NCBI GenBank assembly: GCA_973895155.1
Contig: OZ316899.1
Location: 6,699,241 to 6,763,240, forward strand
Direction: 5' to 3'
Source: Marsupella aquatica
Lineage: Eukaryota; Plantae; Marchantiophyta
Length of the DNA: 64,000 nt
Under the pieces are notes generated by a model. It was not told the origin of the DNA and ran no database searches. It worked only from the letters and a program-made list of their open reading frames with translations. Positions 4,103 to 64,000 of this stretch are shown piece after piece; position 1 is the first letter of the stretch; each line of letters starts with the position of its first letter. A program made the translations under genes and the position numbers.

Positions 4103-7100
4103 TGTCAAACACTTGCCAAGGAGCTTAAGCGGCTTTTCTCCCCAAAAGACTACCTAATACCTGCTCCATGTCATACCAGGGTCACAAAGGATTGACAAAA
4201 CTTCTGAAGTGTGCTTACAATGTCCAATCACTCCATACATAAGTAGTTTCAACTCTCCACTTCTAGAGAGGTAGTCCCCTTGACTACTTTTGTACTCACC
4301 CCTTCCCCTCTCCTCTACTCCAAGGATCAGCAAGGGGGATCTCCGCTCCAAGCTGTCACCTTAGAGTAGATTCTCACACAAACACCCAAGAACCCAAAGT
4401 ACTTTCCTCTTCAAGCTTAAGTCTCCTCAAGACCCTCAAAGTAGTGTTACCCCTCAACCTTGCCCCCCTGGCCTTGGTTTGGGTCCACACATCCCCTTTG
4501 AGCCCTAGAGAAGGCTCCTCTATCTAAGGACTCTTCCTCTTGTTCTTACTTCTTGTTAACACCACACACCAAGCAAAGTACTTTCCACCCTCAAGCTATA
4601 ATCCTCTCTAAGTCTCAAAGTAATGCTATACCTTAACCTTGCCTCCTTGGCCTTGGTTTTGTACTAGCACATCCCCTTCAAGCTTAGACCAAGATTATAC
4701 CATAGCATGGACTCTTCTCTTGCTCTCATATACTTCAAATGCACTCACACTTAATGGTCACAATGAAGATTGGTAAGTCTCCTTTTATTGCATCACCTTT
4801 ACAACAAAAGTTCACTACACATTCTCCCCACTAAGCATGGACCACCTCTCCTTTCTCAAGCTTAGCCCTACCTTGGCAAGGTAGAGATTTCACTTAAGAG
4901 ATGAGACTCCCGGTCCCTAACAAATGAAAACTTCCTCCTTATATACTATCTCCTTCCACATCACACCAAGCTTGACCTGGGGTCCAACTATACCTCCCCC
5001 AAGTCCTCCTAACACACAAAGTCCAACTCTATAGTTCATAGCCCACCCTACTACTTGCTATTTTGCCTCCTTCCAAGCCCTGGAATATGCCACACATGAG
5101 TGGTATGCTTTGACTTCCAAACCTACTCCCACTTATGGTCCTCCTCACCAGCTTACCAACCCACTTGAAAGCTCGCAAAAAGAGTGAGTGAGTCTCAAGT
5201 TGTGCCTAGTCAAAGTTGGCCTTATTTTACTTGTAACCCCTTTACTACCCTAAGTAAACTACCCCCTATATTTACTTTTCTTAACTTGATGGCCTTACAC
5301 CTTTGGCCAAAGGTAAGTACCCTTCTCTAGAGCCTAACTCAAGTGGTATGGGTGCAAGAAAGGTCAGCCCCTAAATCTGGTATTCATTCCCCTATGCCGA
5401 CTTTGGTTTGCAAGTTGTCGGGACTCCCTCGTGGCCTCGGTTAAAAATATATTTGAGTGATTACTTTTCTGGGGTTCCACCTTCACCAGGGGGTGCCTTA
5501 TCTTCCCCTAACTCAGCACAAAAAAATTTGGGCCCCAACGGATACCTCTAGCCAAAGTTATGCCCATTCTCCCAAGGCCTGTTTTTGGTGTAAAGCGGGT
5601 GTAAGCGGCGGCCCGATTACACTTACCTTACATGCCCCTTATGGGGATTCCACGTGTCATGAGGGGAGAGCACTCTCATTATACTCATGTTTCTTATGAA
5701 GAAATTGTAAGGACAGCAATGTTTGCAGCCATTTCTCTCTCGTGAATTCAATCTAAAACCACAGCATTCTCTATTGGATTCTTTCTTGTGCAGCAGTCCA
5801 GCTGATCAGCCGCCAGCCCCTCAATTTCACAGCCACCATAGCTCACAGCCAGCCTAGTCAATTTCGCAGCTAGCCCACCTCTTCAATTTTGCCGCTAGCA
5901 ACACAGTCAATTTCGCAGCTAGCAGCACAGTCACATCAGCGCATTTACAGCACAACAACAGCAGATTTGAAGCACAGCAGCAGCAACCATAGCTTGATTC
6001 CTTCTCAGTCAAGCAGGTCTCTCTTCTCAATTTCGTAGCTGCCCACCTTTGCAATTTCGCAGCTAGCAGCAGCATCATTCAATTCAGCAGCATCAAGGCA
6101 GCAGCCAGCCAATTCTCATGAGCATCTCGTGCCTGATTAGTAGGAGCACCTCTAATCTAGTGTGCAGCTGTCATAGCAGCAAGCAGCCTTCCCAATTCAA
6201 AGCCAGCAGCGATCCTAATTTGCAGCCATAGCTCTTTTCCTTCTCAGCAGCCATAGCTTCTTCAATCAGCAACAGCCCTTGCTTCTTCAATCAGCAGCAG
6301 CCATTTCAATTCAGCCGCCCTTCCTTCAATTCAGCCGCCCTTGTGCTCAATTGATTCCTCAAGTAATCATGCAGCACCTTTGGACAGCCTCCCGGTGCTT
6401 GACGTCCTCACCAGCCTCGTGCTTGCTCCTCCTTGCCTCGTGCTCGCCGCGTGATCGCCGCCCACGCGGTTTACACTTAGAAAAAAATACATTTTTTTTT
6501 GGAAAAACAGCATTTTGGGGCGATTTTGGACCCCCCTCCAAAACTCACACATAAGTCCAAAAGGACTTCTGAGTAGCTCCACTGATTCTATGGACATAGG
6601 ACTATGTCCGGGTTTACTAAGATATAAACAAAACCCTATAACAACTTTTCTAAAATTAGGCAAAGAGGGTCAAGTCTTTATGTCTTCCAAAATTCTTCTC
6701 AACTTTGAGATGCTCCCAAAAAGTAACCAAGTGTGACAAAGTTGTCCCACAAGTTTCTAGGGATAGAGGGGACCATACTTAACCCACTTCCAAACTTGGA
6801 ACCCCTACATTTACCCATCAGCTATTTTTCCCGGGACCCGCTATTTGGTAACTTTGATTTTTGCCAAAATACTTATAACTCCTAGGTTAAGACCCCACTT
6901 GACTTCATACTTTTTCAGGGTTCCCTAGGGACCTCCCAGCACCCATGGGAGAAATATCAGCCAAAAATAAGATGTCCGGTGTCGGGTCATTTTTCGGTCC
7001 CGACTTAGTCGCCTATTATAACTAAGGACGGAACTAGTTTCCTGCCCCTCCTATAGTAACTTGCTTACCCCTAGATAACTTTGCATAACTAAAATTCCCT

Positions 7101-28100: not shown

Positions 28101-29537
28101 GAATGGCAAAGCAATGGGGGTAGCCAAGGCAAGGTAAGGCACGTATTGTTGGGGTTGGATAAGACGCATAATGTCCAGTTATGGCGATACAAGCGGAGGC
28201 ATGTGTACATACCGGAGTCTCTAAGGTTAGAGGTTCTGCAAAAGTACCACGACTTGCCCTGGGGAGGGCATGGAGGACAAGCCGCTACGTATTGCAGCAT
28301 GTCGCAAGATGTGTAGTGGCCGGACATGAAGCAATCGGTCCTTCAACACGTGCAAAGTTGTTACTCGTGCCAAAAGAACCAAACGGTCTATAGGGCAAAA
28401 GGAGGACTACTACAACCCTTACCAGTAGCTATGGTTCCATGAGAGTCCATGGACTTCATTGTTGGGTTACCTGAGTCCCACGGCAGTAACTCCATCTTAA
28501 CAATTGTGGATCAGTTTTCCAAGATGGCGTATTTCTTGCCTACTATGAAGATGGTTTTGGCCCGAGAGGTTGTCGGTCTAGTATTTGACAATGTCTTTCA
28601 ACAATGGGGATTGCCGTTGCATATCCTGTCCCATCGTGATACCAAGTTCACGGGCCATTTCTGGAAGGCGTTGTTCTGGTTATCCGGAATGGACCTTGCT
28701 AGGGGATCAGCGTATCATCACGAGACAGATGACCAAACAAAATGGGTGAATGGTATCGTGGAGGACTACTTGCATCACTTTGTGACGGCCAATCAAAAGG
28801 ATTGGGCAAAGCACTTAATGATGGCCGAGTTTAGGTATAACTCGACCAAACATTTGGCGACGGGGTTTGCACCGTTTGTGTTGGCCACAGGGAGGACGCC
28901 AAGGGCGCCCTCCTGGTTTATAAATCCGAAAGCTTGGCAGACGAAAAGCAAGGTTCAATCTGCGGACGAGTTTATTTGAGAGCGGCGCCTAGTTGTGGAA
29001 GTGGCTACCAAGGATATGACCCTTGCCCAAAGTCGGTACAAGGAGCAAGGGGATAAACATCGACGCCAGGTAAGCTTTGAAATTGGGGAGAGTGTCTGGT
29101 TGCAGTTGAGACCTGAGAAATACCACGGGAACATAAGTAGGAAGCTGGCTCCCAGATATGCGGGGCTCTATTGCATCATACGATGTGTCCACAAGGATAA
29201 TCCGGTTTTGGTGGTGTTGGAGACACCCAAAGAAATGGGCGTGGGCAAAAGCGACCATGCTAGCCGGCTCAAGAAGTTTGTCAAAGACAATGATCCCAAC
29301 CGGGATCAGGTCTTGCGTCCGGACGCCATGCTGGTGGAGGACGCGGAGGAGTTTGAGGTGGAGGCAATTCTCAACCACCATTACAAACGCAAGTTGGGAA
29401 GGCAAATCTTAGAGTATTTGGTGAAGTGGGCTGGCTACGACCAGGCCGAGAGTACTTGGGAACCGGAGGAAAATTTGGGTAATGCCTCAGAGATCCTTGG
29501 AAGCTATTGTAAGCAAAGCGGCCTACCGCCGTTGTGA
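25115..29537 (+). pseudogene. Chromovirus gag-pol with multiple stops and frameshifts and a C-terminal chromodomain (~29346-29510)
   Basis: Gag (ALTWY..W), [68 protein letters not shown]...EYLVKWAGY..ESTWEPEENL. Confidence 0.92.
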
Positions 29538-48891: not shown

Positions 48892-51086
48892 TGAGAGTTG
48901 CTTACCATTCTCCTGAGTTTGAGATCGAGTTTTGCACCCTGTGATCCGACTTCATTGCCCCGGTGATTTTCTCTATCTCTATCCTCTACATTCAGCTTGC
49001 GGGTGGGTTTGTACTACCACTTTTACTATACGGTTCATCTCAGTGCCTTTTATGGAATGCTTTCTTGTTCTTCTACTCGGCATGGCATCATCCTGATTGC
49101 CCGTCGCTGTGACCAGCAACGGAAAGCGTAGACTCACGTTTGGATTCAGAGTCTAATCCAGAGTGTAAGGCTCTGAGCAGACCGTAATAGGAAGCCTGCC
49201 TGATTCTCTAGCCGATCTGATAGAGAGCCATCCCTGCAAAACCTGTTTGAGTGTGTTCCAGTGTTCTAGTGTTCAGCTTTTGAGTGGGCTTTTCGATGTT
49301 GTCCTCTGTCCTTTTGTGGGAAGTGGAAATTCCAAGCTAAGACATGAATTGCCTTTGATTTTGGCTTCAACGTAAGATCTTCATTGCTTCTTCCAAAGCT
49401 GTCGTGGCCGAGGTTCCCATTCAGCTCTGTTTCTCCATTTTTGTAGCCCAATGTGAAGCTCTGAACCTACCTTCTGCTGCACATTTCTCATGTGAGAGTT
49501 TAGCTTATTGTTTGTCTTCTGTCTTTTGTTTGTTATCATTCACGTCCATGTTTCTTCCTATCAGGTTTGTTTGACTTGTCCTAGTTTGGGCTTTCCTTCT
49601 ACTGCATTTGGTGGTTTGATTTGCCCTGCGCTGTGAGCACGCGTACAGTCTTGCAAAATTCCTTTAGAAATCTGGTCAGGTTTATTTGTGAGACAAGCAA
49701 ATTGCCTTGTTACATCTGGTTCTCTATTACATGCCTTGTTGTCCCGTCCACTGTTTCCTGGAATTTTGTTTAAGTCGTCCAGAAGAGAATGGTGATTTCT
49801 TCTTCAATCAAACAAAACCCCACCCAACCACCACCCAAGAACGTGGGGTGCGCGCTTCTTAATCCTCCTCAAACTGGCCCCAAGTCTACTGAAACCCCAT
49901 ATATTACCCACCGGCACCATATATCCTGCTATGTTTGATCCTTTGGTCCCTTTTCTTTAAGTTGCTCTTCGCATTGTTGCTTCATGTGGCCTCAGCATAG
50001 CAGTTTGTATTTGTTGTTTCTTGTCCATGTATAATTTCACATTGACTGACAAGTCTGTATTTCTGCCCGGCCATTTTAGATTTGGAGAGGAGACAGGGAA
50101 GGTTACCATTGTTCATTGTGCTTTTTTTCTCAACTGCTCAGTCGTTTGCTTTGCTATTCTTGCCAGTATGTTGTTGTCGGAGCTTGTAACTGCTAAGTCT
50201 GTTAATTGGTATTAAATTTTGGTATTTCATTTCATTGGTAGTACTTTGTTTCTCTGTTGTGCTGCATTGAATGCTCCTGTTGATTGTTGTGTGTTCCGTC
50301 ATAGTTCCTGCTTTTAGATATTCGTTTGTAGAACAATTTCCGATAACACAATTTTGGTATTACTTCAATCCAAAATTCTATGTAAAAAGACATGAAGTAG
50401 CCTTTGTGCTTAATTGCTATGTAGCATCTGACTTCATTTGATTTTGCTACTGCCTGAAATTCATATCTCTTGCTTGAGTCCCACTTTGCTGGAGTTTTGT
50501 TGCTCTCTGTGCTTTGTTGTGCACATCAGGAGCGCAGGCATCTGAACACCATGATCAGATCAGATCAGATCAGATCAGATCATGTCAGTATAGTGTGGAT
50601 AGCAAGCGAAGGGTGTGTGCTGCATTTTGATATGGACAACCAAGTGTAGAGTTGACTCTTTGTGAATGTTTTAGCCTGTCTTGCCTTGAACTGGGCCATG
50701 GATGAATTGAGCTTGTGAGCAGTTTTTTTTCTTTCCCATCTTCCTGAAGCTTTGTCTGCTTTCTGCCACCTCAGTGGAGGTTCACTTGCAGAACACGACA
50801 ACCAGTGAGTTTTCTCTTTGCTGCAACCTGCAAGGTGAGACTTTCGATCTTTCTGGATGAAAAAACAGGATCCAAATATGATTTATGTACATGTCCATAG
50901 GGAACATGGTTTTATATACATGCTCTTGGTCTTAGGAACTCAGCATGAAATATGTAGTTGGAACCAATTTAGTGAGTGGGAACTGATAAGTGCAGGTTGG
51001 TTGCTGTGGGCAAGGCAAGTCGACCTCTTGCTCGCCTTGCTCATCAAAGGACGTGAACAGAGGACATCACAACAAAAGCAACACTT

Positions 51087-51536
51087 ATGGTGAGGACCCG
51101 CAACGCTGAACATGTGCGGTTTGCACGCAAGGCAGAGATGTTGCACCTTGAGTATGTCAGACTGGGGATCCTTCCAGCCCAGTCTGCATGGTACTTTGAG
51201 TACTCTGTTCTTGCCAGGAACAACTACAGCCGGCCTCTACCTGCTTCAGTACCCTTCCCGACATCCTTGGTATTTGTGTCTCTTGTACATGACCCACCAC
51301 AAATTAGGTGCCAAGGGTGTGTGCATAGTTGCCAATATGACTGTCCTGCCTGTAGGGCTTCTGGCCCAGAGTTGGATGACCGTTCTCTTGGATGTCGGTT
51401 TTTGCACAGAGCACAATGTATCATCTGGAACCACTCGCCATCCTGCAGTGTGCCTGGCGATGTCACTTGTCCTGCCCTCCCAGACCCCAACACCGGTGCC
51501 TTTGGTGTCTACACATGTTTGGATCACACGCTCTAG
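51087..51536 (+). CDS. CACTA cargo ORF A: small Cys/His-rich putative Zn-binding protein (149 aa), family unknown
   Basis: ATG start MVRTR; CQGCVHSCQYDCPAC...CRFLHRAQC..H..C...C...CLDH; co-oriented with the other cargo ORFs. Confidence 0.45.
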   Translation: MVRTRNAEHVRFARKAEMLHLEYVRLGILPAQSAWYFEYSVLARNNYSRPLPASVPFPTSLVFVSLVHDPPQIRCQGCVHSCQYDCPACRASGPELDDRSLGCRFLHRAQCIIWNHSPSCSVPGDVTCPALPDPNTGAFGVYTCLDHTL

Positions 51537-52202
51537 AGGACAACTTGTCTCACCGCATGCACAGACCAGAGACCATTGACCTATAACTTAACACTCTGAC
51601 TTGAACAGAGAGGATATTTACTTAAAATTTTGAATTATGAGCAATTTTGGGTCCAGGGTTTAGGGTCAACAGTACATAACTTATCCTATTATGGCTGCAC
51701 TAAGTACAATATCCTAATTTAAGAGGCTAGCAAGCTCACTTAAAAGTCTCCTTTCAAAGACTGGAATTAATGGGCCATGTGATAACCTGGAAAAAGTGAT
51801 TTATGCCTAACTTATTTGTCTCATTCACTATCATAGCCTATTTAGGATGTATAAATTACAACCCTGATCACACTGCTTGATACCAATCCTGTTCAAAAAA
51901 TGCCTGTTTTACATGTCACGACTATTGTATGTGATTCAAATGCATTAAATCTTGTTGCAGATCTCCTTTGGTGAATCATAGCCACAAAATTGAGGTGTAG
52001 GTGGAGCTATTGTACTAGGGGATCAGTTTTCAGAGTGGGCTCAACAAACCAAAAAGTATGTCTACTCTGCACATGTGTGTGAACATTCATTGCAGTAGCA
52101 ATTGCCACTCTAGTCTATATGCTACACTGTACTTTTTGTACATTGCTAAATTGTAATGTCTGTGCACTCTGCTAAATTGTACTATCTGTCTCATGCGTAG
52201 GC

Positions 52203-52882
52203 ATGGCACGCCCTAAAATCCGAGCCAAGAAGCGGGGGACAGAGGTGAGCAACACAGGTGTAGTTGGGCCAGATGGTAGTAACTTCTCTGCAAGTCAGAT
52301 TTTCCAGAAGGCAGCTCATTGTTGTGCCATTTGTGACGATGGTGGGGGCTTAGCCATATGTGAGGGCCCTTGCATGAGGCATTTCCACTCAACCCGGAGT
52401 CTGACCTTGCTGCAGAAAACAACTGTCCAGGGGTGGGCCTCCCGTCAGCACACCAGGGAGGCTGGATGTGCACTGATTGTTTGGAGAAGCAGGCTAAGTG
52501 TGCACAATGTGGGAAGTTGGGGTCTTATGAGGGCTCTGTTGATGCTCCACCACTTGTTAGGAAATGCCCTGACAGATATTGTGTGAGGTTCTTTTGTTTT
52601 TCATGTTTGCCCGATCTTGCCACAGTTTGCCCACTTCATAAGTGCAAGGCATGTGGTCAGCACGATGAAGATTTCTGGGTGGACATAGTCCACTGTGTTA
52701 GGTGTCCCACCATGTGGCACTTTCATTGTTTGAAGGAGCGTCAAGCAGAAGGCTATGCTTGTGACAGACACATCTATGATCACTCTGCACATGGTGTTGA
52801 TCGATGGATCTTCTATTGTCATCGCCATGCCATAGATCCTACTTTGCACACTCCCATTAGAGATCACATTTCTTGGCTTTGA
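52203..52882 (+). CDS. CACTA cargo ORF B: stand-alone EDM2-like composite PHD-finger protein (~226 aa), with a 1-nt frameshift at ~52388
   Basis: NLS-like MARPKIRAKKR; CAICDDGGGLAICEGPCMRHFH / LNPE..WMCTDC..CAQCGKLGS..C..C..CPLHKCKAC..CVRCPTMWHFHCL..IFYCHRHAIDPTLHTPIRDHI. This follows the EDM2 pattern CAICDNGG..CEG.C.RSFH...CPLHKC...IYC..H.ID..L.TP.RDH. A 5'-UTR GT-AG intron at 52056-52200 ends 2 nt before the ATG. Confidence 0.85.
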
Positions 52883-53477
52883 ACCTGAATAATGTACATG
52901 CATAGTGCACCTGATGTGGATACCTTGGAGATTGCAGACATTCCAATTTTGAGAAGGACCTCTGTAGGAGAGGATGCTTAGGCAACAAGTACCCTAAGTT
53001 CATTACTTGTTCCTGGGTACATGCCTTCAAAAACTCCCCTTAAGCCTTCTAGGACCTTTTTTAACTCTGCAATCATTTTGATCACGACTTACATGGCACT
53101 GCTTAAATTAAATCAGGACTTCTCATTATGAGCATATAAGTTACAAGGCTATTTAATTTGCGAAAATTCCCTTAAAGTGTACCAACATTTTGTATTCTCA
53201 TTGAATGTCTGCCCATTTACAACATCTGTATGTGGCATCACAAAACAATTGCACTTGTCACCTTCAATATTGTGAAGGCACATATTCAAACTATGAGGTG
53301 CATGCTTGTAGGTGTCTAGTACGTTTGTCCCAATATTTCTCCCGTTTGGAATTGGAGCAGAGACTCACCAGACGACTGGACTTGACCAAGTTATAAACGC
53401 AGCATTTTAAGGGCCCTCCGATTATCAGGTGAACGCATTATCTTCCGGTCTGCAGTGATTAGGTGGCCCGTGTGTAC

Positions 53478-54326
53478 ATGGCCTCTAGGAAACGTACAAA
53501 GGTTGACCACCCGCCTATGTTGGCTGGAATCAAAGCCATTTTGATTCCTGGCCACTATGGGTTCACCCAAGTGAGTTGGCCAATCGTACAAAAACGATTT
53601 TCAGAGTTCCATGGGACTGAAGTCAAGGACATCACTCCACAGACTACACATGTTGTTGCGGGGACATGGCTGGATGTGATGAACAAGTGGTCATGGTCCT
53701 TCGTTGATTCTGCCATTACCAACCAAGGTCTAAAAGTAGTTGAAGTCTCTTGGCTGACTGATTCTGTTAAACATAGGTGTGTACAGAGTACTGAGCAATA
53801 TGAGTTGTGGGAGAGTGAGGAGGCCACTGCAGAGGCTTTGGCTGAAAAGGAAGCCTATGAAGCAGCGGCAGAGAAACCCAACTTTGCTTCTGTCCAATAT
53901 GGACCTGTTGTCAACATAGGACACCATCCTATGCGTGCAGATGCTATATTGAATGAGCATGGCAAGGAGAGAAATACCATTATGAAGGGGTTCAGTGTGG
54001 TATTTGCAGAAGAAGGAATTGGGGAGACTAAGTGCAGACTGTACAAGTCCATAGTTGTTGAGCTAGGTGGGACAGTGGAAGAGAGTCTAACAGAAACCTC
54101 CACTCATGTTGTAGGTCTGTCATACATGAAGATATGCAGAAAATTCTTTAAGACAATAGTGCGTGATTTTGTCATGAACAACAATCTTTGGGTGCTTTCC
54201 CCTGATTGGCTTCTGGAATCAGCAGCTAGAGGGAAGCGACAGAATGCTTGGGACTTTGATATTTTTGAGGCCTGGCCCTCCAAGATTCAGCGGAGATGTA
54301 TGCTTAGCAAAGGTGGGAGAGAGTGA
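53478..54326 (+). CDS. CACTA cargo ORF C: tandem BRCT protein (282 aa), Pol lambda BRCT-like
   Basis: NLS-like MASRKRTK; BRCT1 ..G.EVKDITPQTTHVVA...VVEVSWLTDSV..Q..EQYEL; BRCT2 KGFSVVF..G..K..Y..IVVELGGTVEESLTETSTHVV...VLSPDWLLES. Open frame. Confidence 0.85.
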   Translation: MASRKRTKVDHPPMLAGIKAILIPGHYGFTQVSWPIVQKRFSEFHGTEVKDITPQTTHVVAGTWLDVMNKWSWSFVDSAITNQGLKVVEVSWLTDSVKHRCVQSTEQYELWESEEATAEALAEKEAYEAAAEKPNFASVQYGPVVNIGHHPMRADAILNEHGKERNTIMKGFSVVFAEEGIGETKCRLYKSIVVELGGTVEESLTETSTHVVGLSYMKICRKFFKTIVRDFVMNNNLWVLSPDWLLESAARGKRQNAWDFDIFEAWPSKIQRRCMLSKGGRE

Positions 54327-54502
54327 GGAGTAGGAGTCCCTCATATTTTTGTATAAATCACAATTTTGTAATAAATATGATCCTTGAACTAACTCATCTT
54401 GTCATGGTTGGTCGCAGTTGAAGTGATTGTTGTTTCCTGCTGCGTGGGGTGTGACTGTGAATCTACTTGCTGGGCTCTGTTTGGCTGAAGACTTTGGTGG
54501 GT

Positions 54503-55036
54503 ATGCTGCCTCTCCCAGACCGTCAGGCCCTATGTAGGGTCCTCCTACGGGTTGCATCGTGCATGGCTACTGCTTGGGCTTACTTGTGTGGATTGGTAAC
54601 CAGACAGAGTGTAGCTCCATCCGAGATAATGCCTGCAGACCTTGGATGTGTTGTGAATGCTGTGGTGAATGAGGATGCACAGTCGGAAGAGGACATTTAC
54701 TTTTCAGCAGATGAGTTAGACAAGCACGATGCTGTAGGTGGTTCCTTGTTGCCTGATTTGGCAGATGATATAGTTCTTACACATGTCTGGCCGAGGGTTC
54801 TTGTGGTGTCTGGCGCACAAGATATCTGCAAATATAGACTAATTAGTACCCAGTGGAGGGACTTGGTAGCAACATGTGCACCATGGAGGGCACTGCTGCC
54901 ACTGCTTGTAGGCATGGATCGAAGACCACCATGGCATGAGCAGGGTTTAGACCTTGATGACTTAATGTACATGCCTGAGTACCTCAGGGCTGAGTGGCAT
55001 CGACAACAGGATTGGTATCCGTATTTGATGTGGTAG
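54503..55036 (+). CDS. CACTA cargo ORF D: F-box-only protein (~177 aa)
   Basis: SLLPDLADDIVLTHVWPRV....CKYRLISTQWRDLV (~54746-54886) fits the plant F-box consensus LLPGLPDDI...R.V.K.WR.LV; no kelch or LRR domain follows. Confidence 0.65.
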   Translation: MLPLPDRQALCRVLLRVASCMATAWAYLCGLVTRQSVAPSEIMPADLGCVVNAVVNEDAQSEEDIYFSADELDKHDAVGGSLLPDLADDIVLTHVWPRVLVVSGAQDICKYRLISTQWRDLVATCAPWRALLPLLVGMDRRPPWHEQGLDLDDLMYMPEYLRAEWHRQQDWYPYLMW

Positions 55037-55354
55037 TAAGATGAGGACATCTCACACCGGTCTCGCACCTGGCACCTGTGTCTATGACTATACATGATTG
55101 GACTCTGATATGGTCATGGATGTACGTGTAGAGGCAGTACATGTGAGGACAGCGGAGGAGTTGACACCCTCAAACATTTAGGAATTTTGTCTCATTCACT
55201 TGAGAATAGGTACATGACTCAGGCACCTATATTTTTTGTTTTTTTGGAACGTTACGTATTTTGGCAAGTACAGTCAGGGGTGAAATCCTTAACAGGAAGT
55301 GTATTTTTCACTTGCATAATAAAATGACAGGGTGCTGAGTGCGTGTGTATAGTG

Positions 55355-58300
55355 ATGGCTCCAAGGTTGCCTCTTCACAACCCATTTAGGATTAGGCATC
55401 ATGATTCTAAATTGTGGATGCGTGAACAAGCCCGGGCCGCCCAAGGTAGGAGTAGGAGGATGAGATGCCCATGCACACAGTGCCAAGGATTCAAGTCGTT
55501 GAGTTTGAACACTGTGCACCTTCACCTGCTGCGGCATGAAAGGCACCCTCGGTGGAGGGTTTGGAATGTACCAGCAGAAGAAGACTCCTCTGATGAAGAG
55601 TGGAGAGCTGACTTTGTGGATTCTAATACAGCTAGGCGTAGAGACTACGTAGAGCAGGACATAGACTGTGCAGAGGATGGTCCTGGGGTCCAACATGAGA
55701 ACATGGATGACCAAGATGGAGATGTAGAGGCAGTCACTGAGGACGGTGGGATGGATGTCCCAAGAATGGTTCAAGAGATTTTTGAAGACCTTGATGCTTT
55801 TTACGACACAGTGGAATCAGAAGAGGACAATGAACCGCAGCCACACATTGGCGATGGCCAAGCTGAACCTGACTTTGACATTGGGGAAGGTGCAGCAGAG
55901 AGGGAGTGGGTGTTTGGGGGCCCAAAACACATCAAAGAAGCTTGCATTCCTATCTACGAGGGGTCGAACTGCTCCAAGCTGGGTTTTGTCGTGTTGTTGT
56001 TGAACATCTGTGGCAATCACAATGTTCCCAATATATTTGTGACAGAGTTGTTGACCTTCTTGCGCCGAAATGTGTTACCAGATGGTAATTCAATTCCAAA
56101 AAATATGTACGAGGCTAGGAAATTGATGTCTAACCTTGGGCTAAACTATGTGTCTATTGACGCATGCCCTGATGGGTGTGTTCTCTTTCGCAAAGAGCAT
56201 GCAGATAAATTGACATGCCCTCATTGTGGTAAGCACAGGTACAAGAATGTAGGGAAATGTACACACCCTGCCAAGGTTCTTCGTCATTTTCCTCTCATTC
56301 CTAGACTACAACGTCTGTTTAGATGCCCTGCCATTTCCAAGCTGATGACATGGACTTTTGATAACAAGAGCAGTGATGGCCTGCAGCGTCACATTGGAGA
56401 TTCCAACCATTGGAAATTTGTTGATGAGAGGTGGCCACAGTTTGCTGCAGAGAAGCGGAACTTTCGATTTGGTCTATCACTGGATGGAGTAAACCCATTT
56501 GGAGACAAAAACAACCGTTATTCATGTTGGCCGGTTACGCTGCTAAATTACAACCTTCCCCCATGGATGACTACAAAGAGGTTTTTTGTCATGATGGTGC
56601 TGTTAATCCCTGGACCAGCTTCTGTGACCGAGCAATTCATAGATATCATGTTGGCTCCAGCAGTGGAAGAGTGGAAGACTTTGTGGATAGAAGGGGTGTT
56701 AACCCATGATGTTCTGAAGGGGCTTCTTCGACCCAGCCCCTTTAGACTGCATGCAATTTGTTTGCTGGATATAGCAGATTACCCAGGCCATGGCATCATA
56801 TCTGGACGAGTGACAAAGGGCTATGTGGGGTGCACACCATGTGGGAAAAATGTGACAAGTGAGTGGTCGCATGCCCTGCACAGTATGAAATTTCAGGGGC
56901 ATAGAAGGTATCTGCCTGTTGATCATCCTTACAGGCACACACGGTCTCAAATTGCACACTTCAACAACAAAACAGAGCTTCGTGGCCCACCACAGAGGGT
57001 CACCAGAGAGCAAGTCCTGAGGTGGGCAGCCAGGAAGGCTGATTGGGACAAGAGAAGTGCCACTGATCGAGAACCTGAGGATCCAGTGGTGAAACACGGT
57101 GTGAAAAGACAGACCTTGATGGACTTGGAGTTGGAGTACTGGAGGGTAATGTACTTAGCCTCCAGCCCCTGTATGATTGCAATTTTAGATTGGAGCAATG
57201 GTGGATTGATGTTGGTTACAATCCTCCTCTGTGGTTAATTAGTGTTTCTGTTGTTGAATTCTTTGCTTTGTGGAGTGCAGGAATTCGAGCCCAGCAAACA
57301 CAATGTGGACGTCATGCACATTGAGAAAAATATTTGTGAGAGCTTGCTGAAGTTCTTGTCGGGTGAGAAAGATACAGGAGCAGTTCGAGCTGATATGCAA
57401 CAGAAGGGGATTCGCCCTCACCTTTGGTTGAAGCCCCATGCAAGCAATCCCAATGTACTTCTCAAGTTCCAAGCTCCCTATGTGTGCACACAGGATGAAT
57501 GGAAGACATTCTTGTATAGATTGAGCTGTCTGAAAGTGCCCTCTGGCTATGCTGGTGCCTTCAAGAAGCATATTACAAAGAATAAACTTGGCAGTATGAA
57601 AACACATGACTACCATGTGTTGATGCAGCACATTCTGCCCCTATGCCTCAGAGGTCTCATGCAGAAACCAGTCCGTAATGTCATTCTTCGACTGTGCAAT
57701 GTATTTTGCCGTATATGTGTGAAAGTGTGGGATCCCCAAGGATTGGAGCAGTTGAAGCAGGATGCTGCTTATGTCCTCTGTGACTTGGAGATATACTTCC
57801 CCCCTGCTTTCTTTGATGTTATGACTCATCTCCTAATCCATGTGGTAGAAGAGCTAGGGCAGTATGGGCCAGTCAGTACCAGATGGATGTACCCTATGGA
57901 GCGATACATGAAGTTGTTGAAAGGTCATGTGAGAACATACTACAGGCCAGAGGCTTCCATGGCATTGGGGTACATTAAGGATGAGACGTTGGGATTCCTA
58001 ACAGAGTACATGGCTGGGTCTGGTGAAGCTATGACAAGAGTTTGGAAATCTGGTGAAGATGATGGAGTGAGTGGCGAGGTTGTTGAAGGTGTGGGACGTG
58101 CTGTTCAGCTGCCTGTTGCGATTCGAGACAAGGCTCATTCATATGTGCTGGCAAACACAGAGCCTATGCAACCATGGTGGAGGTGAGTGATTGAATTGAC
58201 TTGCCTTTGTTGTGATGCTTCTTGTCTGTTCCAAGGGTGATCTTAGGTTGTCATGTGTTGTTTAGACCTAACTATGCCTGTACCTCATATTGCAGGGAAT

Positions 58301-59055
58301 ATGATATGCAAAAAGCTGCACACTCTGGGCAGCAGGATCCCTTCCCACAGTTCGAGCAGTGGATTCGGGTGACAATTCGAGAGCATAGTAGACATCACCC
58401 AGATATGGAGAAGGATTTGTATCTTCTATCTGTGCCACCACGATTGTCTATTCTGACCTACAAACGGATGAGAGCTTATGGAAATCATTATCGAGTGAGG
58501 GATGAGCAGGGTGACCATTGTGTATCATATGATTGTGGTTTGATTTCTGTGTTTGAGCAGAGAACCTTTGAAGAACAGAGGGGGTGGATGAAGATGGGTT
58601 ACGTGGGGGAGTTGACCGACATTTGGGTGTTGAATTATGATAACACAAGTGTCCCAGTGATATTGATGAAGGGATCATGGGTGAAATCAGAGTGGCAGAG
58701 ACCAAGGGCCACCATGAAGCGTGATCATGATGGGTTCTTGTTGGCCAATTTTAGGTCCAGAGTACCAGAATGGTCTGAGCCTTTTGTTTTCCCTAGCCAA
58801 GTTGAACAGGCTTTCTTTGCAGATGTGGAGGAGTCACATGGCTGGAGGGTGGTATGCCATAGCCAAGCACGGAACAGGCGGATGGATGGAAGTAAAGTAG
58901 AGTTCAGTTTGGATGACCATGCTACATTCGAGCATCCTAGTCATGAGACTGTACTTCCAACTCGGGCAGGGACTGACTACATCCCCTTAACATTGAGAGA
59001 GACATATGATGAACCTGGGCAAATGGAATATGATGAGGTTGATGATTTGCAATAG
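55355..59055 (+). CDS. CACTA transposase Tnp2/TnpD, 3 exons (55355-57145, 57281-58182, 58296-59055), apparently intact
   Basis: CPCTQC N-terminal domain; IDACPDGC..CPHCG; LSLDGVNPF, YNLPPW, DYPG; HNVDVMHIEKN; MKTHDYH; FFDVMTHL, RWMYPMERYM; EPFVFPSQVEQ. GT-AG introns 57146-57280 (phase 0) and 58183-58295 (phase 2) keep the frame. Confidence 0.93.
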
Positions 59056-59232: not shown

Positions 59233-62200
59233 ATGGGGGAAGAGGGTGATGACATGGAGACAGACATGGGGCTTGGAGAGTGGGGTGAAGAGGAAAGATT
59301 GGATATGGATGGAGACCCAGATGCAGGGGGCTCACAGAAAAATGCACTTGTGCAAGATGCACAGGGCCCTCATCAAGTCCCAGGTAGGTGGGCAGCTAGA
59401 GAGAAATCACATAATCCATACCCTAGAAGGAGCCAGAGTTATTGGCAAGGGACGCCTGATAATTATGATGATGACTATGATGGAGCAGAAGATGGATGGG
59501 ATGAATATGAACACCCAGAGCGTGGTAGAGACGGGTACAGAGGGCAATGGAAAGGTGAGGAGGATGATTGGACAAGTAAGTGCCTTGTGCTAGTGATTTT
59601 GTGATGGTAGTAGAGATTTAGCTCAATATGCACTTATCTGATGTGTAGCTAGGGCAAAGAGTTTATCTTACAGGTCCATGAGTGTGGCATGTACCTGTTG
59701 GTATGCAGACTCTGATTGGGACAATCACGAAAACAACAAAGGCCATCCACGTTCAGATAGGAGGCAATCATTCACAGGCGGGAGAAACGGCCCTAATTCA
59801 TCAAGACAAAGCAATAGGACAGGTGGTCCAAAACCATCTATGCGCCAAGGGAGAGGTAACTTGGTCATTGCAGAATTGCTCTGAAGTCCACTGTATATTT
59901 GGCAGCAGGATTTATGATTCATACTACCTAATGGATCCTGTAAATGTGCAGGGACTCCAGGGAGGTTTGGACAATGCAATCCAGGCCGTGGGGGGAGATC
60001 AGGCCGTGGAGGGACCCCAGGCCGTGGGGGGACACCAGGCCGTGGAGGGACACCTAGTAGCGCTTCAGGGAGTACCAAGGCAGGAGACAGTAACAAATTT
60101 GGTAAAGTAGAAGTGAATTCCGATGGTTGGATAACTCCCACATGTGATGGTAAGAACCGTTGGCATTCTGACCTAAGAGGAGAAGTATTGCATTGATTAG
60201 ATTTGAGCATTACAGAGTTTAGGAGTCAGAACAAAGCTGATTGGGCTGCTATCTGCAAGGACATTCTTGAACGGTGGGACTATGTTGGTAATGATGGTAA
60301 GGGCCCAGTTGAAGATTGCATATCAGATTATGCAATGAGGATTTTGAAACAAGAGAGGCATAGGTTGAAAAGGATGTGGATAGACAATGGTTCTAACAGG
60401 AGAATGCCACCACCCCCATCATTGGAATTGGATCAATGGACACGGTTAATCAAAGGGTTCATGTCAGAGGCTGGACAGAGCAAAAGTGAATTGATGTCAA
60501 ATGCTCGAGGCAAAGTGTCACAGGCTGGGAGAGGAAGTTATGCTCCAGTGAAAGAACAATTGGTAAGGCAGTGACATGCCTGATAGTAAGCCTCAAACTT
60601 ATCATCTTGCTACCATTATTACATTTTCATTGACAATCAACACTTGGTTTCATTCATATGTATGTTGATGTGGACTGCAGAAGAAATTGACAGGTGAAGA
60701 ACCATCAGCACAAGAAGTGAGAGAGGAGTTCATGAAACAAAGGAGTGAGGTGACAAGTGTGACTTCCAAACTGGTGATTATGTTGTAATTCTGTATGTTC
60801 TGTGACTATTTGCCCTTGAGCATCAGAAAGAATTGTAGTAGGAAGTAAGCAACCAGTTCTTGGGGACAATTATCTGAGATATGTAAGCTATGTTATGACA
60901 GGGAACTGTTACAACTCTCACAGAGATGTGTGAACGGTTGAAGTCATTAGAGTGTGGACTCCCTCGAGTGGAAAGTAAATTGGCTGATCGTTTGGATATT
61001 GTGGAGGCATCTGTAGCGAACCTTCTTGCATCAGTGGAATCTAATTTCAAGCTTGTGATTGAAAAATTGGGTGGTTCCCAACCAAACAATGAGGGCAACA
61101 TTGTACAAAGTGTGCCCTTGTTAACAAAAAAGGGAATTGGCAAATTTGACACAGGTATGGAAATGACACCGGCCCATTGTTCATTGTGTCCTATGTTCAA
61201 ATGTTAGAAGTAAGTTTTCATGAATTGAGTGAATGGTTTTAATGCAGGAAGAGTGGAGGCAGAGAAGGACCCTGTAATCAGTAAGTGAATGGTTTGAATG
61301 CAGGAAGAGTGGAGGCAGAGAAGGACCCTGTAATCAGTAAGCAGAATGGCAAAAAGGTTGCTGAGACAGGTAACCTGCTATGATCCAGTACATTACATTT
61401 GAAAAGTGCATGGAGTTTTGTGAAGCTTAAGCCCGGTTGGAGGTAATCTTTTCTGTAAGAACTGGTTGGATCAACTGGGATCTGAAGTGACATCATGATT
61501 GATGTATCAGGTGATTCAAAGAGCAATGAAAAAGATGTGCCCAGTGCCTCAGTGACCATAGCCAAGGAGGTATCAGGTAAGCTGATGCTTTAAATTCCTC
61601 TCCTACCATTGTTGAGAAACACTTCAGTGGTTAATAGATTGAACCTGAATATTGTGGTGTGTTTATTGATCAGCAGAAGCAGACATGGAGGATATGGCAA
61701 TGGTAAAGAAGGGGAAGAAGGCTGTTCGTATCGGTAAGGAGATAGTGACAACTTTGTGGTTGGTGACATGTACATGGCGCACATGTGATGAGTGATTCAC
61801 TTATGTTGGACAATGCACTGAATTGTAGTTGATGCAGAGTTGACAGACTCTCAACCAAGTGGGAGCAGGGTGAAGCGACGTCGAAACTTGGGAGCAACAT
61901 TGGATGCAAGTAAGATTGTAGATGCTTCAATTGAAGCAAGTACAATGTTGGCAGATACTGAGATGATATCGCAGGGAGATCCTGCTATACAATTGGAAGT
62001 GTCAAATATGGATGCAGATTCTTTGAAGAAGAGTGTATCCAATTCTCGATCACCAGCACAAAACACTCATGCCAAAGTCATGACTCGCAACCAAGGTATG
62101 AATAATGTCATGTATAAGCCACCCAGGAAAGCCAAGAAAAGCAGCCAGGGTAAGGTGGAGGTGATAACCACAGCAGAGCCAGTCCATAATCTTCTATCAT

Positions 62201-62430
62201 GGGAGGATGACTCGCAGGTATGTGTGGGTACAGGCATTTTGCGACCGGATCATGCTAAATTCCATGGCAAAGTGGTCCTGGATGACCATGTAGTAGTGTT
62301 GTTGACTACAGTGATTGTATCTGATTGTAATTTGCCATTTCCGAATAGAGACGATGATCCACCTCAGGAAATAATTGCACATGCAGTAGGATCTCTTGTG
62401 CTCTGGCCATCAGAGTGTGTTAGTCTGTAG
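59233..62430 (+). CDS. TnpA/Tnp1-like multi-exon gene, with an in-frame TGA at 60194
   Basis: Series of GT-AG-bounded exons; acidic N-terminus; GRGGTP repeats; ERHRLKRMW..PPP..DQWTRLI..S..NAR; C-terminus VGTG..FHG...V..V...LPFP....AVGSLVLWP. Exon structure approximate. Confidence 0.75.
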
Positions 62431-63724: not shown

Positions 63725-64000
63725 AGAAACCGACCCAGCCCGACAGTCCTACAATCGAGCAGGTGTTTAGGCCGAGGAAGGAAGACTTGTCGATGCAGCA
63801 ACCATGCATGCAGAATCTGCTGAAATTGCTAGAGAAAGAAAGGAGAACGGCAATGGCAACGGCAACGGGACCGGTACAGAATACTGCTCCCAAAGTTGGC
63901 CTAAGCTGACTTACCAGGGAAAACCCCTTTACCGGGGCCAAGGAGAGAGGGAGGCCGGAACACGAGCCGGGAGTCCGAATGTATGTAGGAGCCTCAAGTC

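What the first reader, a model, noticed from the sequence alone, without database searches (positions are those of the whole stretch)
52203..52882. Stand-alone EDM2-type composite PHD module encoded by a transposon
Seen: the Cys/His scaffold matches the EDM2 PHD region from CAICD.GG to TP.RDH. The ORF stops right at the domain end and has no EDM2 C-terminal methyltransferase-like domain. The loops are strongly diverged while the Zn ligands are largely retained, which suggests long purifying selection. Inference: either an H3K9me2 reader that tethers the transposase or promotes full-length processing of the element's own transcript, or a dominant-negative decoy of the host AAE complex. The single -1 frameshift (CAC^TC at 52388; HFH-LNPE is restored by one C) may be decay or an assembly error.
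Basis: partly seen in the sequence, partly recalled or inferred. Interest (0 to 1): 0.85.

Follow-up and report, generated by a model that had tools for sequence, protein, structure and literature searches.

The report
Transposon's own histone-reader gene, broken copy
A family of cut-and-paste (CACTA) transposons in a bryophyte-type genome carries its own small gene for a histone-reading zinc-finger module, copied long ago from the host EDM2 family and kept under selection; the copy in this window is disabled by a one-base deletion.

Summary
Window 52203-52882 (+) holds an ORF of about 226 codons, split by a one-base deletion after 52387. It encodes a basic tail and an EDM2/NSD-type triple PHD module, with all 24 zinc ligands retained.

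Intact sister genes of 213-245 aa exist in public assemblies, with the same MAR.. start and ..DHISW(L/I) stop. Contigs of all four sequencing runs laid on the window show the missing C. The break is therefore decay of this copy, or of its subfamily.

The gene sits upstream of a Tnp2 transposase in five diverged element lineages. One of them shows the whole order Cys-rich ORF, PHD, BRCT, F-box, Tnp2. The transposon-borne modules form one clade (100/100) on a very long stem within the plant EDM2 family, but the donor clade is unresolved. dN/dS is 0.19-0.26 for the module.

Related CACTA lineages lack the gene. The predicted fold resembles the NSD PHD5-C5HCH and PZP histone H3-tail readers.

Histone binding and the biological role were not tested. 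I favour a trans-acting H3-tail reader that protects or guides the element.

This scan already followed up intact 681-letter copies of the same gene elsewhere in this genome (s1-327412, s1-324818, s1-327468).

The parts
52203..52388 (+). PHD gene, piece 1. Holds the basic N-terminal tail (MARPKIRAKKRG, which looks like a nuclear localisation signal) and the first five zinc ligands of finger 1 (C-x2-C..C-x3-C..H).
   Evidence: Pfam PHD-1st_NSD, E 1.1e-4. 77% identical to the intact sister in L001.
52387..52388 (+). The break: one base is missing compared with sister copies. Translation from the ATG runs out of frame here and stops at 52584-52586.
   Evidence: read-laying table 4 shows a C put in behind 52387 in contigs of all four runs. 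Intact P0001 and P0002 read HFH-LNPES across this site.
52388..52882 (+). PHD gene, piece 2. Holds the rest of finger 1, finger 2, finger 3 with its C-terminal extension (..YCHRH..TPIRDHISWL) and the stop codon.
   Evidence: PHD_NSD and PHDvar_NSD match. 83% and 79% identical to P0001 and P0002.
51087..51536 (+). Context: the Cys-rich ORF (MVRTR..), first gene of the accessory row.
   Evidence: No Pfam match. A 27%-identical homologue sits in the same position in L014.
53478..54326 (+). Context: the tandem BRCT gene.
   Evidence: Pfam BRCT, E 3.6e-13, two stretches. Homologues lie after the PHD gene in L003, L006 and L014.
54503..55036 (+). Context: a weak F-box-like ORF.
   Evidence: Pfam F-box, E 0.08 only. 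A 39%-identical homologue sits in the same position in L014.
55355..59055 (+). Context: the Tnp2-type CACTA transposase gene, probably three exons. The likely introns are 57215-57280 and 58183-58235. Both are GT..AG and keep the frame. I saw no break in this gene.
   Evidence: Transposase_21 (E 1.3e-59), DUF4218 and DUF4216. Intron reading, with an intron at the same place in L003.
61840..62430 (+). Context: a downstream ORF of the element, 37% identical to the DUF8039 ORF of L003.

Best explanation
**What it is (shown).** This is a dead copy of a conserved accessory gene of one CACTA (En/Spm, Tnp2-type) transposon lineage found in bryophyte-type genomes. The intact gene encodes a protein of 213-245 residues: a short basic tail followed only by the EDM2/NSD-type triple PHD zinc-finger module.

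**History (inferred from the trees and the gene structure).**
- The module was taken once from a host EDM2-family gene.
- The transfer probably went through a spliced RNA, because the transposon gene has no introns while a host gene has at least three inside the module.
- The module has since travelled with one clade of transposases under purifying selection.

**This copy.** A one-base deletion after 52387 cuts the protein inside finger 1. The transposase next to it shows no break.

**How it works (inference, not tested).** The protein enters the nucleus and binds the N-terminal tail of histone H3, as related PHD modules do. It acts in trans for the element. My preferred version is that it occupies the marks of silent chromatin on the element's own copies. 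That would keep the element expressible and mobile, either by competing with host readers or by bringing in the other cassette proteins (BRCT, F-box).

**Odds.**
- About 0.9 that it is a conserved transposon gene of EDM2-family origin.
- About 0.6 that it reads histone tails.
- About 0.3 for the anti-silencing version.
For: - **Homology.** Pfam gives the NSD-type PHD order. The family profile matches host EDM2-like proteins at E 1e-30 to 1e-45 over the whole module. The named hosts include Mangifera and Magnolia 'ENHANCED DOWNY MILDEW 2-like', Physcomitrium 'EDM2', Marchantia, Riccia, Sphagnum, Ceratodon and Calypogeia.
- **Stand-alone gene.** Fifteen proteins from the profile search, mostly full-length at 213-245 aa, share the basic N-terminus, and nearly all end in DHISW(L/I).
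- **Part of the transposon.** The PHD gene lies upstream of Tnp2 in the window, L003, L004/L005 and L014. In L006 it lies upstream of the BRCT gene. Protein identities between these lineages are only 27-57%. Thousands of contig pieces lay on the stretch.
- **One origin.** The transposon modules form one clade with 100/100 support. They share Cys at a ligand position where all but one gapped row of the 31 hosts have His. The PHD-bearing elements sit in one transposase clade (SH-aLRT 97) that excludes three elements without the gene.
- **Selection.** dN/dS is 0.23-0.38 overall and 0.19-0.26 for the module, and every bootstrap value was below 0.73. The ORF is 84% identical with one gap, against 63% with 27 gap columns for the 3' flank. 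In runs X5 and X7, depth at 85% or more likeness peaks on the ORF.
- **Fold.** The AlphaFold model has pLDDT 85.6. NSD3 PHD5-C5HCH bound to an H3K9me3 peptide gives Z 6.0 at rmsd 2.6 over 84 residues. The PZP domains of JADE1 and BRPF1 give E 3e-5.
- **Decay of this copy.** The extra C is seen in all four runs.
- **Background.** The EDM2 PHD region binds H3K9me2 within the ASI1-AIPP1-EDM2 complex (PMC9910501, PMC7529245).
Against: - No binding, expression or localisation data exist. All runs laid were contigs of unknown library type, so there is no RNA evidence.
- The transposon clade sits on a stem of about 2 changes per site and has its own conserved residues (H39, H60, H194, C132). Its specificity may therefore differ from EDM2's.
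- In run X3 about two thirds of the contig depth at 52387 lacks the C, as the window does. Copies with a broken reader gene seem to have multiplied, so the gene is not needed in cis.
- The module tree and the transposase tree disagree on where L004 belongs.
- No terminal inverted repeats were found in the window, so the element's ends are undefined here.
- Related CACTA lineages do without the gene.
Confidence: 0.5

Rival explanations
1. Chromatin tether for transposition. The reader docks the Tnp2/TnpA machinery on nucleosomes with a given H3 state. This would steer insertion into safe, silent chromatin or help the machinery find donor copies. It would work like the chromodomain of chromovirus integrases or the PHD finger of RAG2.
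For: The gene lies directly upstream of Tnp2 and persists even in a lineage that lost the BRCT gene (L004). It is confined to one transposase clade. It has the fold of an H3-tail reader.
Against: The module and transposase trees are not congruent. Copies with a broken reader appear to be abundant.
Confidence: 0.25
2. EDM2-like RNA-processing helper. The reader binds H3K9me2 over the element's own long, intron-bearing transcription unit and recruits host ASI1/AIPP1-type factors. This would suppress premature polyadenylation so that full-length transposase mRNA is made.
For: Host EDM2 does this at genes with heterochromatin inside them (PMC9910501, PMC7529245). The element is longer than 10 kb and its transposase gene has introns.
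Against: The protein lacks every EDM2 region outside the PHD module, with no DNMT1-RFD-like N-terminus and no ELP domain. There is therefore no known surface for the partners. The module is also strongly diverged.
Confidence: 0.1
3. Passenger fragment. A piece of host gene was picked up by a CACTA element, as in Pack-type transduplication, and is carried without function.
For: CACTA elements are known to capture host fragments (general knowledge). This copy is frameshifted, and other broken copies exist (L008, P0006).
Against: The complete ORF has a conserved start, stop and size across lineages only 36-56% identical. dN/dS is about 0.2 in the module. All 24 ligands are kept.
Confidence: 0.05
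4. Exon of a larger transcript. The ORF would be spliced to downstream genes and serve as the N-terminal domain of a fusion protein with the transposase.
For: En/Spm elements make several proteins from one spliced precursor (general knowledge). A conserved ..GTAG|GCATGG lies just before the ATG in the window and in L002, with a variant (GTAG|GCATATATG) in L001. It could be a splice acceptor that joins a leader exon.
Against: A stop codon follows DHISW within 0-9 codons in nearly every full-length member, and no GT donor precedes it in the window. A leader-exon acceptor would still give a stand-alone protein.
Confidence: 0.05

Closest known systems
Arabidopsis EDM2 and EDM2-like proteins of seed plants (PHD region)
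   Same: Same three-finger composite in the same order, with the same 24 zinc ligands and the TPxRDH end. The EDM2 PHD region binds H3K9me2 (PMC9910501, PMC7529245).
   Different: No DNMT1-RFD-like N-terminus, acidic or PGR regions, or N6-adenine-methyltransferase-like ELP domain. About 35% identity. It forms a separate long-branched clade. One ligand is Cys instead of His. It is encoded by a multi-copy transposon.
Short EDM2-like proteins of bryophytes (Physcomitrium XP_024383187, Ceratodon KAG0504417, Sphagnum KAH9531908, Marchantia MARPO_0005s0286, Riccia KAL3685775, Calypogeia CAM6087769)
   Same: They are the best-scoring host relatives, and the module is at their C-terminal end, so they also lack the ELP domain. 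They are plausible donors.
   Different: They carry 290-660 further N-terminal residues. The Ceratodon gene has at least three introns inside the module. The tree does not resolve them as sister to the transposon clade.
NSD1/2/3 PHD5-C5HCH tandem and PZP domains (JADE1, BRPF1, AF10, PHF14)
   Same: The best structural matches. NSD3 4gng_D gives Z 6.0, rmsd 2.6 over 84 residues. JADE1 and BRPF1 PZP give E 3e-5. All of them are histone H3-tail readers by their entry titles.
   Different: Animal multidomain enzymes or scaffolds. Identity is 18-27%. They have two fingers (NSD) or another arrangement (PZP), against three fingers here.
Chromatin readers and anti-silencing proteins of mobile elements: chromovirus integrase chromodomain, RAG2 PHD finger, VANDAL VANC, Spm TnpA, fungal transposons with TET/JBP (PMC12730594, PMC12973397)
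   Same: A mobile element carries its own factor that reads or changes the host's chromatin marks. A chromodomain integrase ORF lies in this same window at 28995-29537.
   Different: A different protein family, a separate gene rather than a domain of the enzyme, and a CACTA host element. I found no report of an EDM2-type module in a CACTA element.

Membership tests
EDM2/NSD-type composite PHD module (Pfam PF23011 + PF22908 + PF23004) | Three fingers in the order PHD-1st, PHD, variant PHD | tested here: met
   One search gives this order across the two pieces. The family profile aligns to hosts over positions 34-222 of 226.
EDM2/NSD-type composite PHD module (Pfam PF23011 + PF22908 + PF23004) | Scores above Pfam's gathering cut-offs | tested here: inconclusive
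   The window pieces score 22.7, 17.5 and 25.2 bits against cut-offs of 27, 23.9 and 27. Relative P0007 passes two models and P0003 passes one.
EDM2/NSD-type composite PHD module (Pfam PF23011 + PF22908 + PF23004) | Full set of zinc ligands (3 x 8 Cys/His) and the C-terminal TPxRDH motif | tested here: met
   All 24 columns that are invariant in hosts are Cys or His in the window copy. One of them is Cys instead of His throughout the transposon clade. TPIRDH lies at 52853-52870.
EDM2/NSD-type composite PHD module (Pfam PF23011 + PF22908 + PF23004) | Fold of a tandem PHD histone reader | tested here: met
   The model of intact sister P0001 has pLDDT 85.6. NSD PHD5-C5HCH gives Z 5.8-6.2, well above the next rows.
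EDM2 protein proper (orthologue, member of the ASI1-AIPP1-EDM2 complex) | N-terminal DNMT1-RFD-like region and C-terminal ELP (N6-adenine-methyltransferase-like) domain | tested here: not met
   The ORF is 226 codons with nothing but a 37-residue tail and the module. The domain list comes from PMC7529245.
EDM2 protein proper (orthologue, member of the ASI1-AIPP1-EDM2 complex) | Falls inside the EDM2 orthologue clade | tested here: not met
   It forms a separate 100/100 clade outside the clade of long EDM2 proteins (Marchantia 1628 aa, Riccia 1320 aa and seed plants). Its position at the base is unresolved.
EDM2 protein proper (orthologue, member of the ASI1-AIPP1-EDM2 complex) | Binds H3K9me2 and AIPP1/EDM3 | not testable with these tools
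   Needs peptide arrays and co-IP.
CACTA (En/Spm) transposon | Tnp2-type transposase with DUF4218 and DUF4216 | tested here: met
   PF02992 at E 1.3e-59, PF13960 at 2e-27, PF13952 at 1e-5, on the same strand 2.5 kb downstream.
CACTA (En/Spm) transposon | CACTA terminal inverted repeats and 3-bp target duplication | tested here: inconclusive
   No pair better than chance was found in the window. The 3' end may lie beyond base 64000.
CACTA (En/Spm) transposon | Many copies, with the gene inside the repeated unit | tested here: met
   Between 2038 and 5420 contig pieces were laid in runs X1 and X3, nearly half of them 99% or more alike. The same gene order is seen in L003, L004, L006 and L014.

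The most novel reading that the evidence does not exclude
The transposon uses molecular mimicry of the host's own anti-silencing reader. A stripped-down EDM2 PHD module would work together with the cassette's F-box and BRCT proteins. It would sit on H3K9-methylated nucleosomes of the element and either block host heterochromatin readers or mark them for degradation. That would amount to a dedicated counter-silencing toolkit carried by a DNA transposon and retained through deep divergence of the element lineage in bryophyte-type genomes.
Probability: 0.2. Interest if true: 0.85.

Novelty: new variant of a known kind. Interest (0 to 1): 0.58.

Why it matters
Few transposon-encoded factors that deal with host chromatin are known, and in plants they are limited to a handful of cases such as VANC and TnpA. 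Here a whole transposase clade keeps a histone-reader gene of host origin under selection, within a conserved row of accessory genes.

This gives a concrete system for asking how DNA transposons cope with, or exploit, heterochromatin in early-diverging land plants. The module is small and well folded, so its histone specificity can be measured directly. The copy in this window is a pseudogene and matters only as a member of that family.

Tried and rejected
- **Assembly error as the only cause of the frameshift.** The site is not a long homopolymer (CACCTC against CACTC). In run X3 most contig depth shares the window's state. I read the break as real decay, but I cannot prove it for this exact locus, because no near-identical contig spans the site in X1.
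- **Intron at the break.** Impossible for a one-base gap.
- **Broken transposase.** The in-frame TAA at 57236 and the frame change at 58186 are better read as two short frame-preserving introns. One of them lies at the same place in L003.
- **Terminal repeats.** The repeat finder, a CACTA pattern search and an all-against-all 16-mer scan gave only chance-level pairs.
- **PDB sequence search.** No true hit.
- **Metagenome scan.** Only two short loci came back.
- **Organism.** Names were coded, an SRR prefix search in papers was useless, and the best transposase hit was only 61-62% identical. 'Bryophyte' rests on the nearest named relatives, and 'moss' rests on an earlier scan note that I did not verify.
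- **Papers not held.** Tsuchiya and Eulgem 2014 and Lei 2014.
- **Literature.** Four searches found no report of an EDM2-type PHD in a CACTA element. That does not prove there is none.

Full report
**1. The observation**

Window 52203-52882 (+) reads in frame 1 from ATG: MARPKIRAKKRG...CAICDDGGGLAICEGPCMRHFH, up to base 52388. The frame that begins at 52388 continues LNPESDL...TPIRDHISWL and stops at 52880-52882. The two frames join only if base 52388 is used twice, so one base is missing. Left unjoined, translation from the ATG ends out of frame at 52586.

Pfam places PHD-1st_NSD on piece 1 (E 1.1e-4). It places PHD_NSD (5e-3) and PHDvar_NSD (1.7e-5) on piece 2, in the order found in EDM2 and NSD proteins. 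All three scores are just below their gathering cut-offs. I searched the pieces separately and put X at the break in my own alignments.

**2. Intact sisters, and the nature of the break**

A word-based search with piece 2 found two Logan proteins, P0001 (226 aa, 83% identical) and P0002 (220 aa, 79%). Both have the same MAR.. start and ..DHISWL stop, and both read HFH-LNPES across the window's break. Their contigs are colinear with the window.

I laid Logan contigs of four runs, from four organism labels, on 51000-56500. A C put in behind 52387 appears in every run:
- X1: three contigs, all of the depth at the site.
- X3: seven contigs, about a third of the depth.
- X5 and X7: one contig each.

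The intact state therefore exists widely. The deleted state is also common in X3, which suggests that a subfamily with the broken gene has multiplied. The site is not a long homopolymer. I read the break as real decay, but no near-identical contig spans the site in the best holder, so I cannot prove it for this exact locus.

Other members are broken elsewhere (L008, P0006).

**3. What the module is related to**

An exhaustive search of 1.84 billion representatives with piece 2 gave 113 hits.
- The top nine are short stand-alone proteins of 143-245 aa.
- Next come bryophyte proteins from Sphagnum, Calypogeia, Ceratodon, Marchantia, Riccia and Physcomitrium ('ENHANCED DOWNY MILDEW 2' isoforms).
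- After them come seed-plant 'ENHANCED DOWNY MILDEW 2-like' proteins of about 1200-1300 aa. These have a DNMT1-RFD N-terminus and the same PHD trio.

A profile of seven stand-alone members matches these hosts over positions 34-222 of 226, with E between 1e-30 and 1e-45.

All 24 Cys/His columns that are invariant in hosts are kept in the window copy. The whole transposon clade has Cys where all but one gapped row of the 31 hosts have His, at position 132 of P0001. It also has its own conserved His at positions 39, 60 and 194.

The short bryophyte proteins end 5-48 residues after the module. The lack of the methyltransferase-like ELP domain is therefore not special to the transposon copy.

**4. 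It belongs to the transposon**

On the same strand downstream lie:
- a tandem BRCT ORF;
- a weak F-box ORF;
- a Tnp2 transposase with DUF4218 and DUF4216.

The apparent breaks in the transposase are two short GT..AG introns that keep the frame, at 57215-57280 and 58183-58235. L003 has an intron at the first of these places.

The same linkage recurs in diverged elements from other samples:
- **L003:** PHD (38% identical), BRCT (27%), Tnp2 (45-57%), DUF4216, a weak Transposase_24 match and DUF8039.
- **L004/L005:** PHD (45.5%) directly followed by Tnp2 (53-58%), with no BRCT gene.
- **L006:** PHD (56%) followed by BRCT.
- **L014:** the whole row of Cys-rich ORF (27%), PHD (45%), BRCT (29%), F-box (39%) and Tnp2 (52%).

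A profile search found 15 stand-alone proteins, most of them 213-245 aa. Nearly all have a basic N-terminus and end in DHISW(L/I).

Three related CACTA elements (L010, L011, L012) have no such module by tblastn or six-frame profile search. On a transposase tree, the three PHD-bearing elements fall in one clade (SH-aLRT 97) that excludes those three.

No terminal inverted repeats were found in the window.

**5. History and selection**

A careful maximum-likelihood tree of 40 modules puts all nine transposon rows in one clade (100/100). The stem is about 2.0 changes per site. The position of this clade among the moss-short, liverwort-short and long-EDM2 clades is unresolved. A 95-row quick tree agrees.

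The Ceratodon host gene has at least three introns inside the module, while the transposon ORF has none. This suggests capture through a spliced RNA, or later intron loss.

Among the window, L001 and L002:
- dN/dS is 0.23-0.38, with bootstrap upper limits of 0.35-0.61;
- it is 0.19-0.26 for the module alone;
- it is 0.4-1.1 for the N-terminal tail.

The ORF is 84% identical with one gap, against 63% identity with 27 gap columns for the 3' flank. In runs X5 and X7, depth at 85% or more likeness is highest on the ORF.

One conflict remains. L004's module groups with L003's (98/96), but its transposase groups with the window's (98). This points either to recombination between lineages or to a long-branch artefact.

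**6. Fold and likely function**

The AlphaFold model of intact P0001 is confident (pLDDT 85.6, pTM 0.78). Residues 1-25 are disordered.

Structural matches:
- Foldseek ranks the PZP domains of JADE1 and BRPF1 first (E 3e-5).
- It then ranks the NSD1/2/3 PHD5-C5HCH tandems.
- VIA-align gives NSD3 4gng_D, a complex with an H3K9me3 peptide, Z 6.0 at rmsd 2.6 over 84 residues. This is clearly above the next family.
- Finger 1 alone resembles the single PHD fingers of AIRE, TRIM24/66 and CHD4, at 34-42% identity but only Z 2-2.6.

All of these are readers of the histone H3 tail. Host EDM2 binds H3K9me2 through this region within the ASI1-AIPP1-EDM2 complex, which promotes full-length transcripts of genes with internal heterochromatin (PMC9910501, PMC7529245).

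From this I infer a nuclear, trans-acting H3-tail reader that serves the element. I slightly prefer an anti-silencing role at the element's own silent chromatin over a tether for the transposition machinery.

**7. Comparison and novelty**

The module is a member of the EDM2/NSD-type PHD family by order, ligands and fold. The protein is not an EDM2 orthologue, because it lacks the other domains and lies outside that clade.

As a system it works like other mobile-element chromatin factors, such as the chromovirus chromodomain, the RAG2 PHD finger and VANC. It differs in protein family, in being a separate gene, and in its host element. Four literature searches found no description of it.

This scan has already followed up intact 681-letter copies of the same gene, and the cassette, elsewhere in this genome (s1-327412, s1-324818, s1-327468). 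My results were obtained independently and agree with those notes. The window's copy is one letter shorter and dead.

**8. Verdict**

The functional part is open. The family is a new variant of a known kind of system, transposon-encoded chromatin factors. This particular copy is a pseudogene member.

Noticed in passing
L011:8893-9363 (ENA ERZ25039595 contig_2152): A related CACTA element without the PHD gene has a 156-aa SET-domain ORF (PF00856) just upstream of its Tnp2 gene. This would be a different chromatin-related cargo in the same position.
   Followed up: no
window 52120-52189: A 26-bp tandem repeat (2.8 copies, TGCTAAATTGTACTGTCTGTACACTC) ends 13 bases before the PHD start codon. ..GTAG|GCATGG directly before the ATG is conserved in L002, and L001 has the variant GTAG|GCATATATG. 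It could be a splice acceptor for a leader exon, or a regulatory site.
   Followed up: partly
window 57215-57280 and 58183-58235: Two short GT..AG introns (66 and 53 nt) keep the Tnp2 reading frame. The first removes an in-frame TAA and has a counterpart at the same place in L003 (about 6860-7025).
   Followed up: partly
window 51000-51551: Summed contig depth over the Cys-rich ORF region is two to five times that of the rest of the element in runs X1 and X3. This part may also occur in shorter derivatives or in other families.
   Followed up: no
L004 against L003 and the window: The module tree and the transposase tree disagree. L004's PHD groups with L003's, while its Tnp2 groups with the window's. 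L004 also lacks the BRCT gene. Recombination between CACTA lineages is possible.
   Followed up: partly
L013:3001-6438 (Ceratodon purpureus MU104891.1): The host EDM2-like gene KAG0504417 has at least three introns inside the PHD module (after residues 347, 473 and 492). The transposon gene has none.
   Followed up: partly
L008:754-1420 (JGI Ga0066793_10125614): Another family member carries a frameshift at a different place, inside finger 2. This is independent decay.
   Followed up: no
window 59981-60054 and 61228-61349: An 18-bp tandem repeat (4 copies, CCAGGCCGTGGAGGGACA) and a 56-bp tandem repeat (2.2 copies) lie downstream of the transposase, inside the presumed element.
   Followed up: no
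P0032 (487 aa, representative library): One predicted protein holds two consecutive copies of the module. It may be a tandem duplication or a mis-joined gene model.
   Followed up: no
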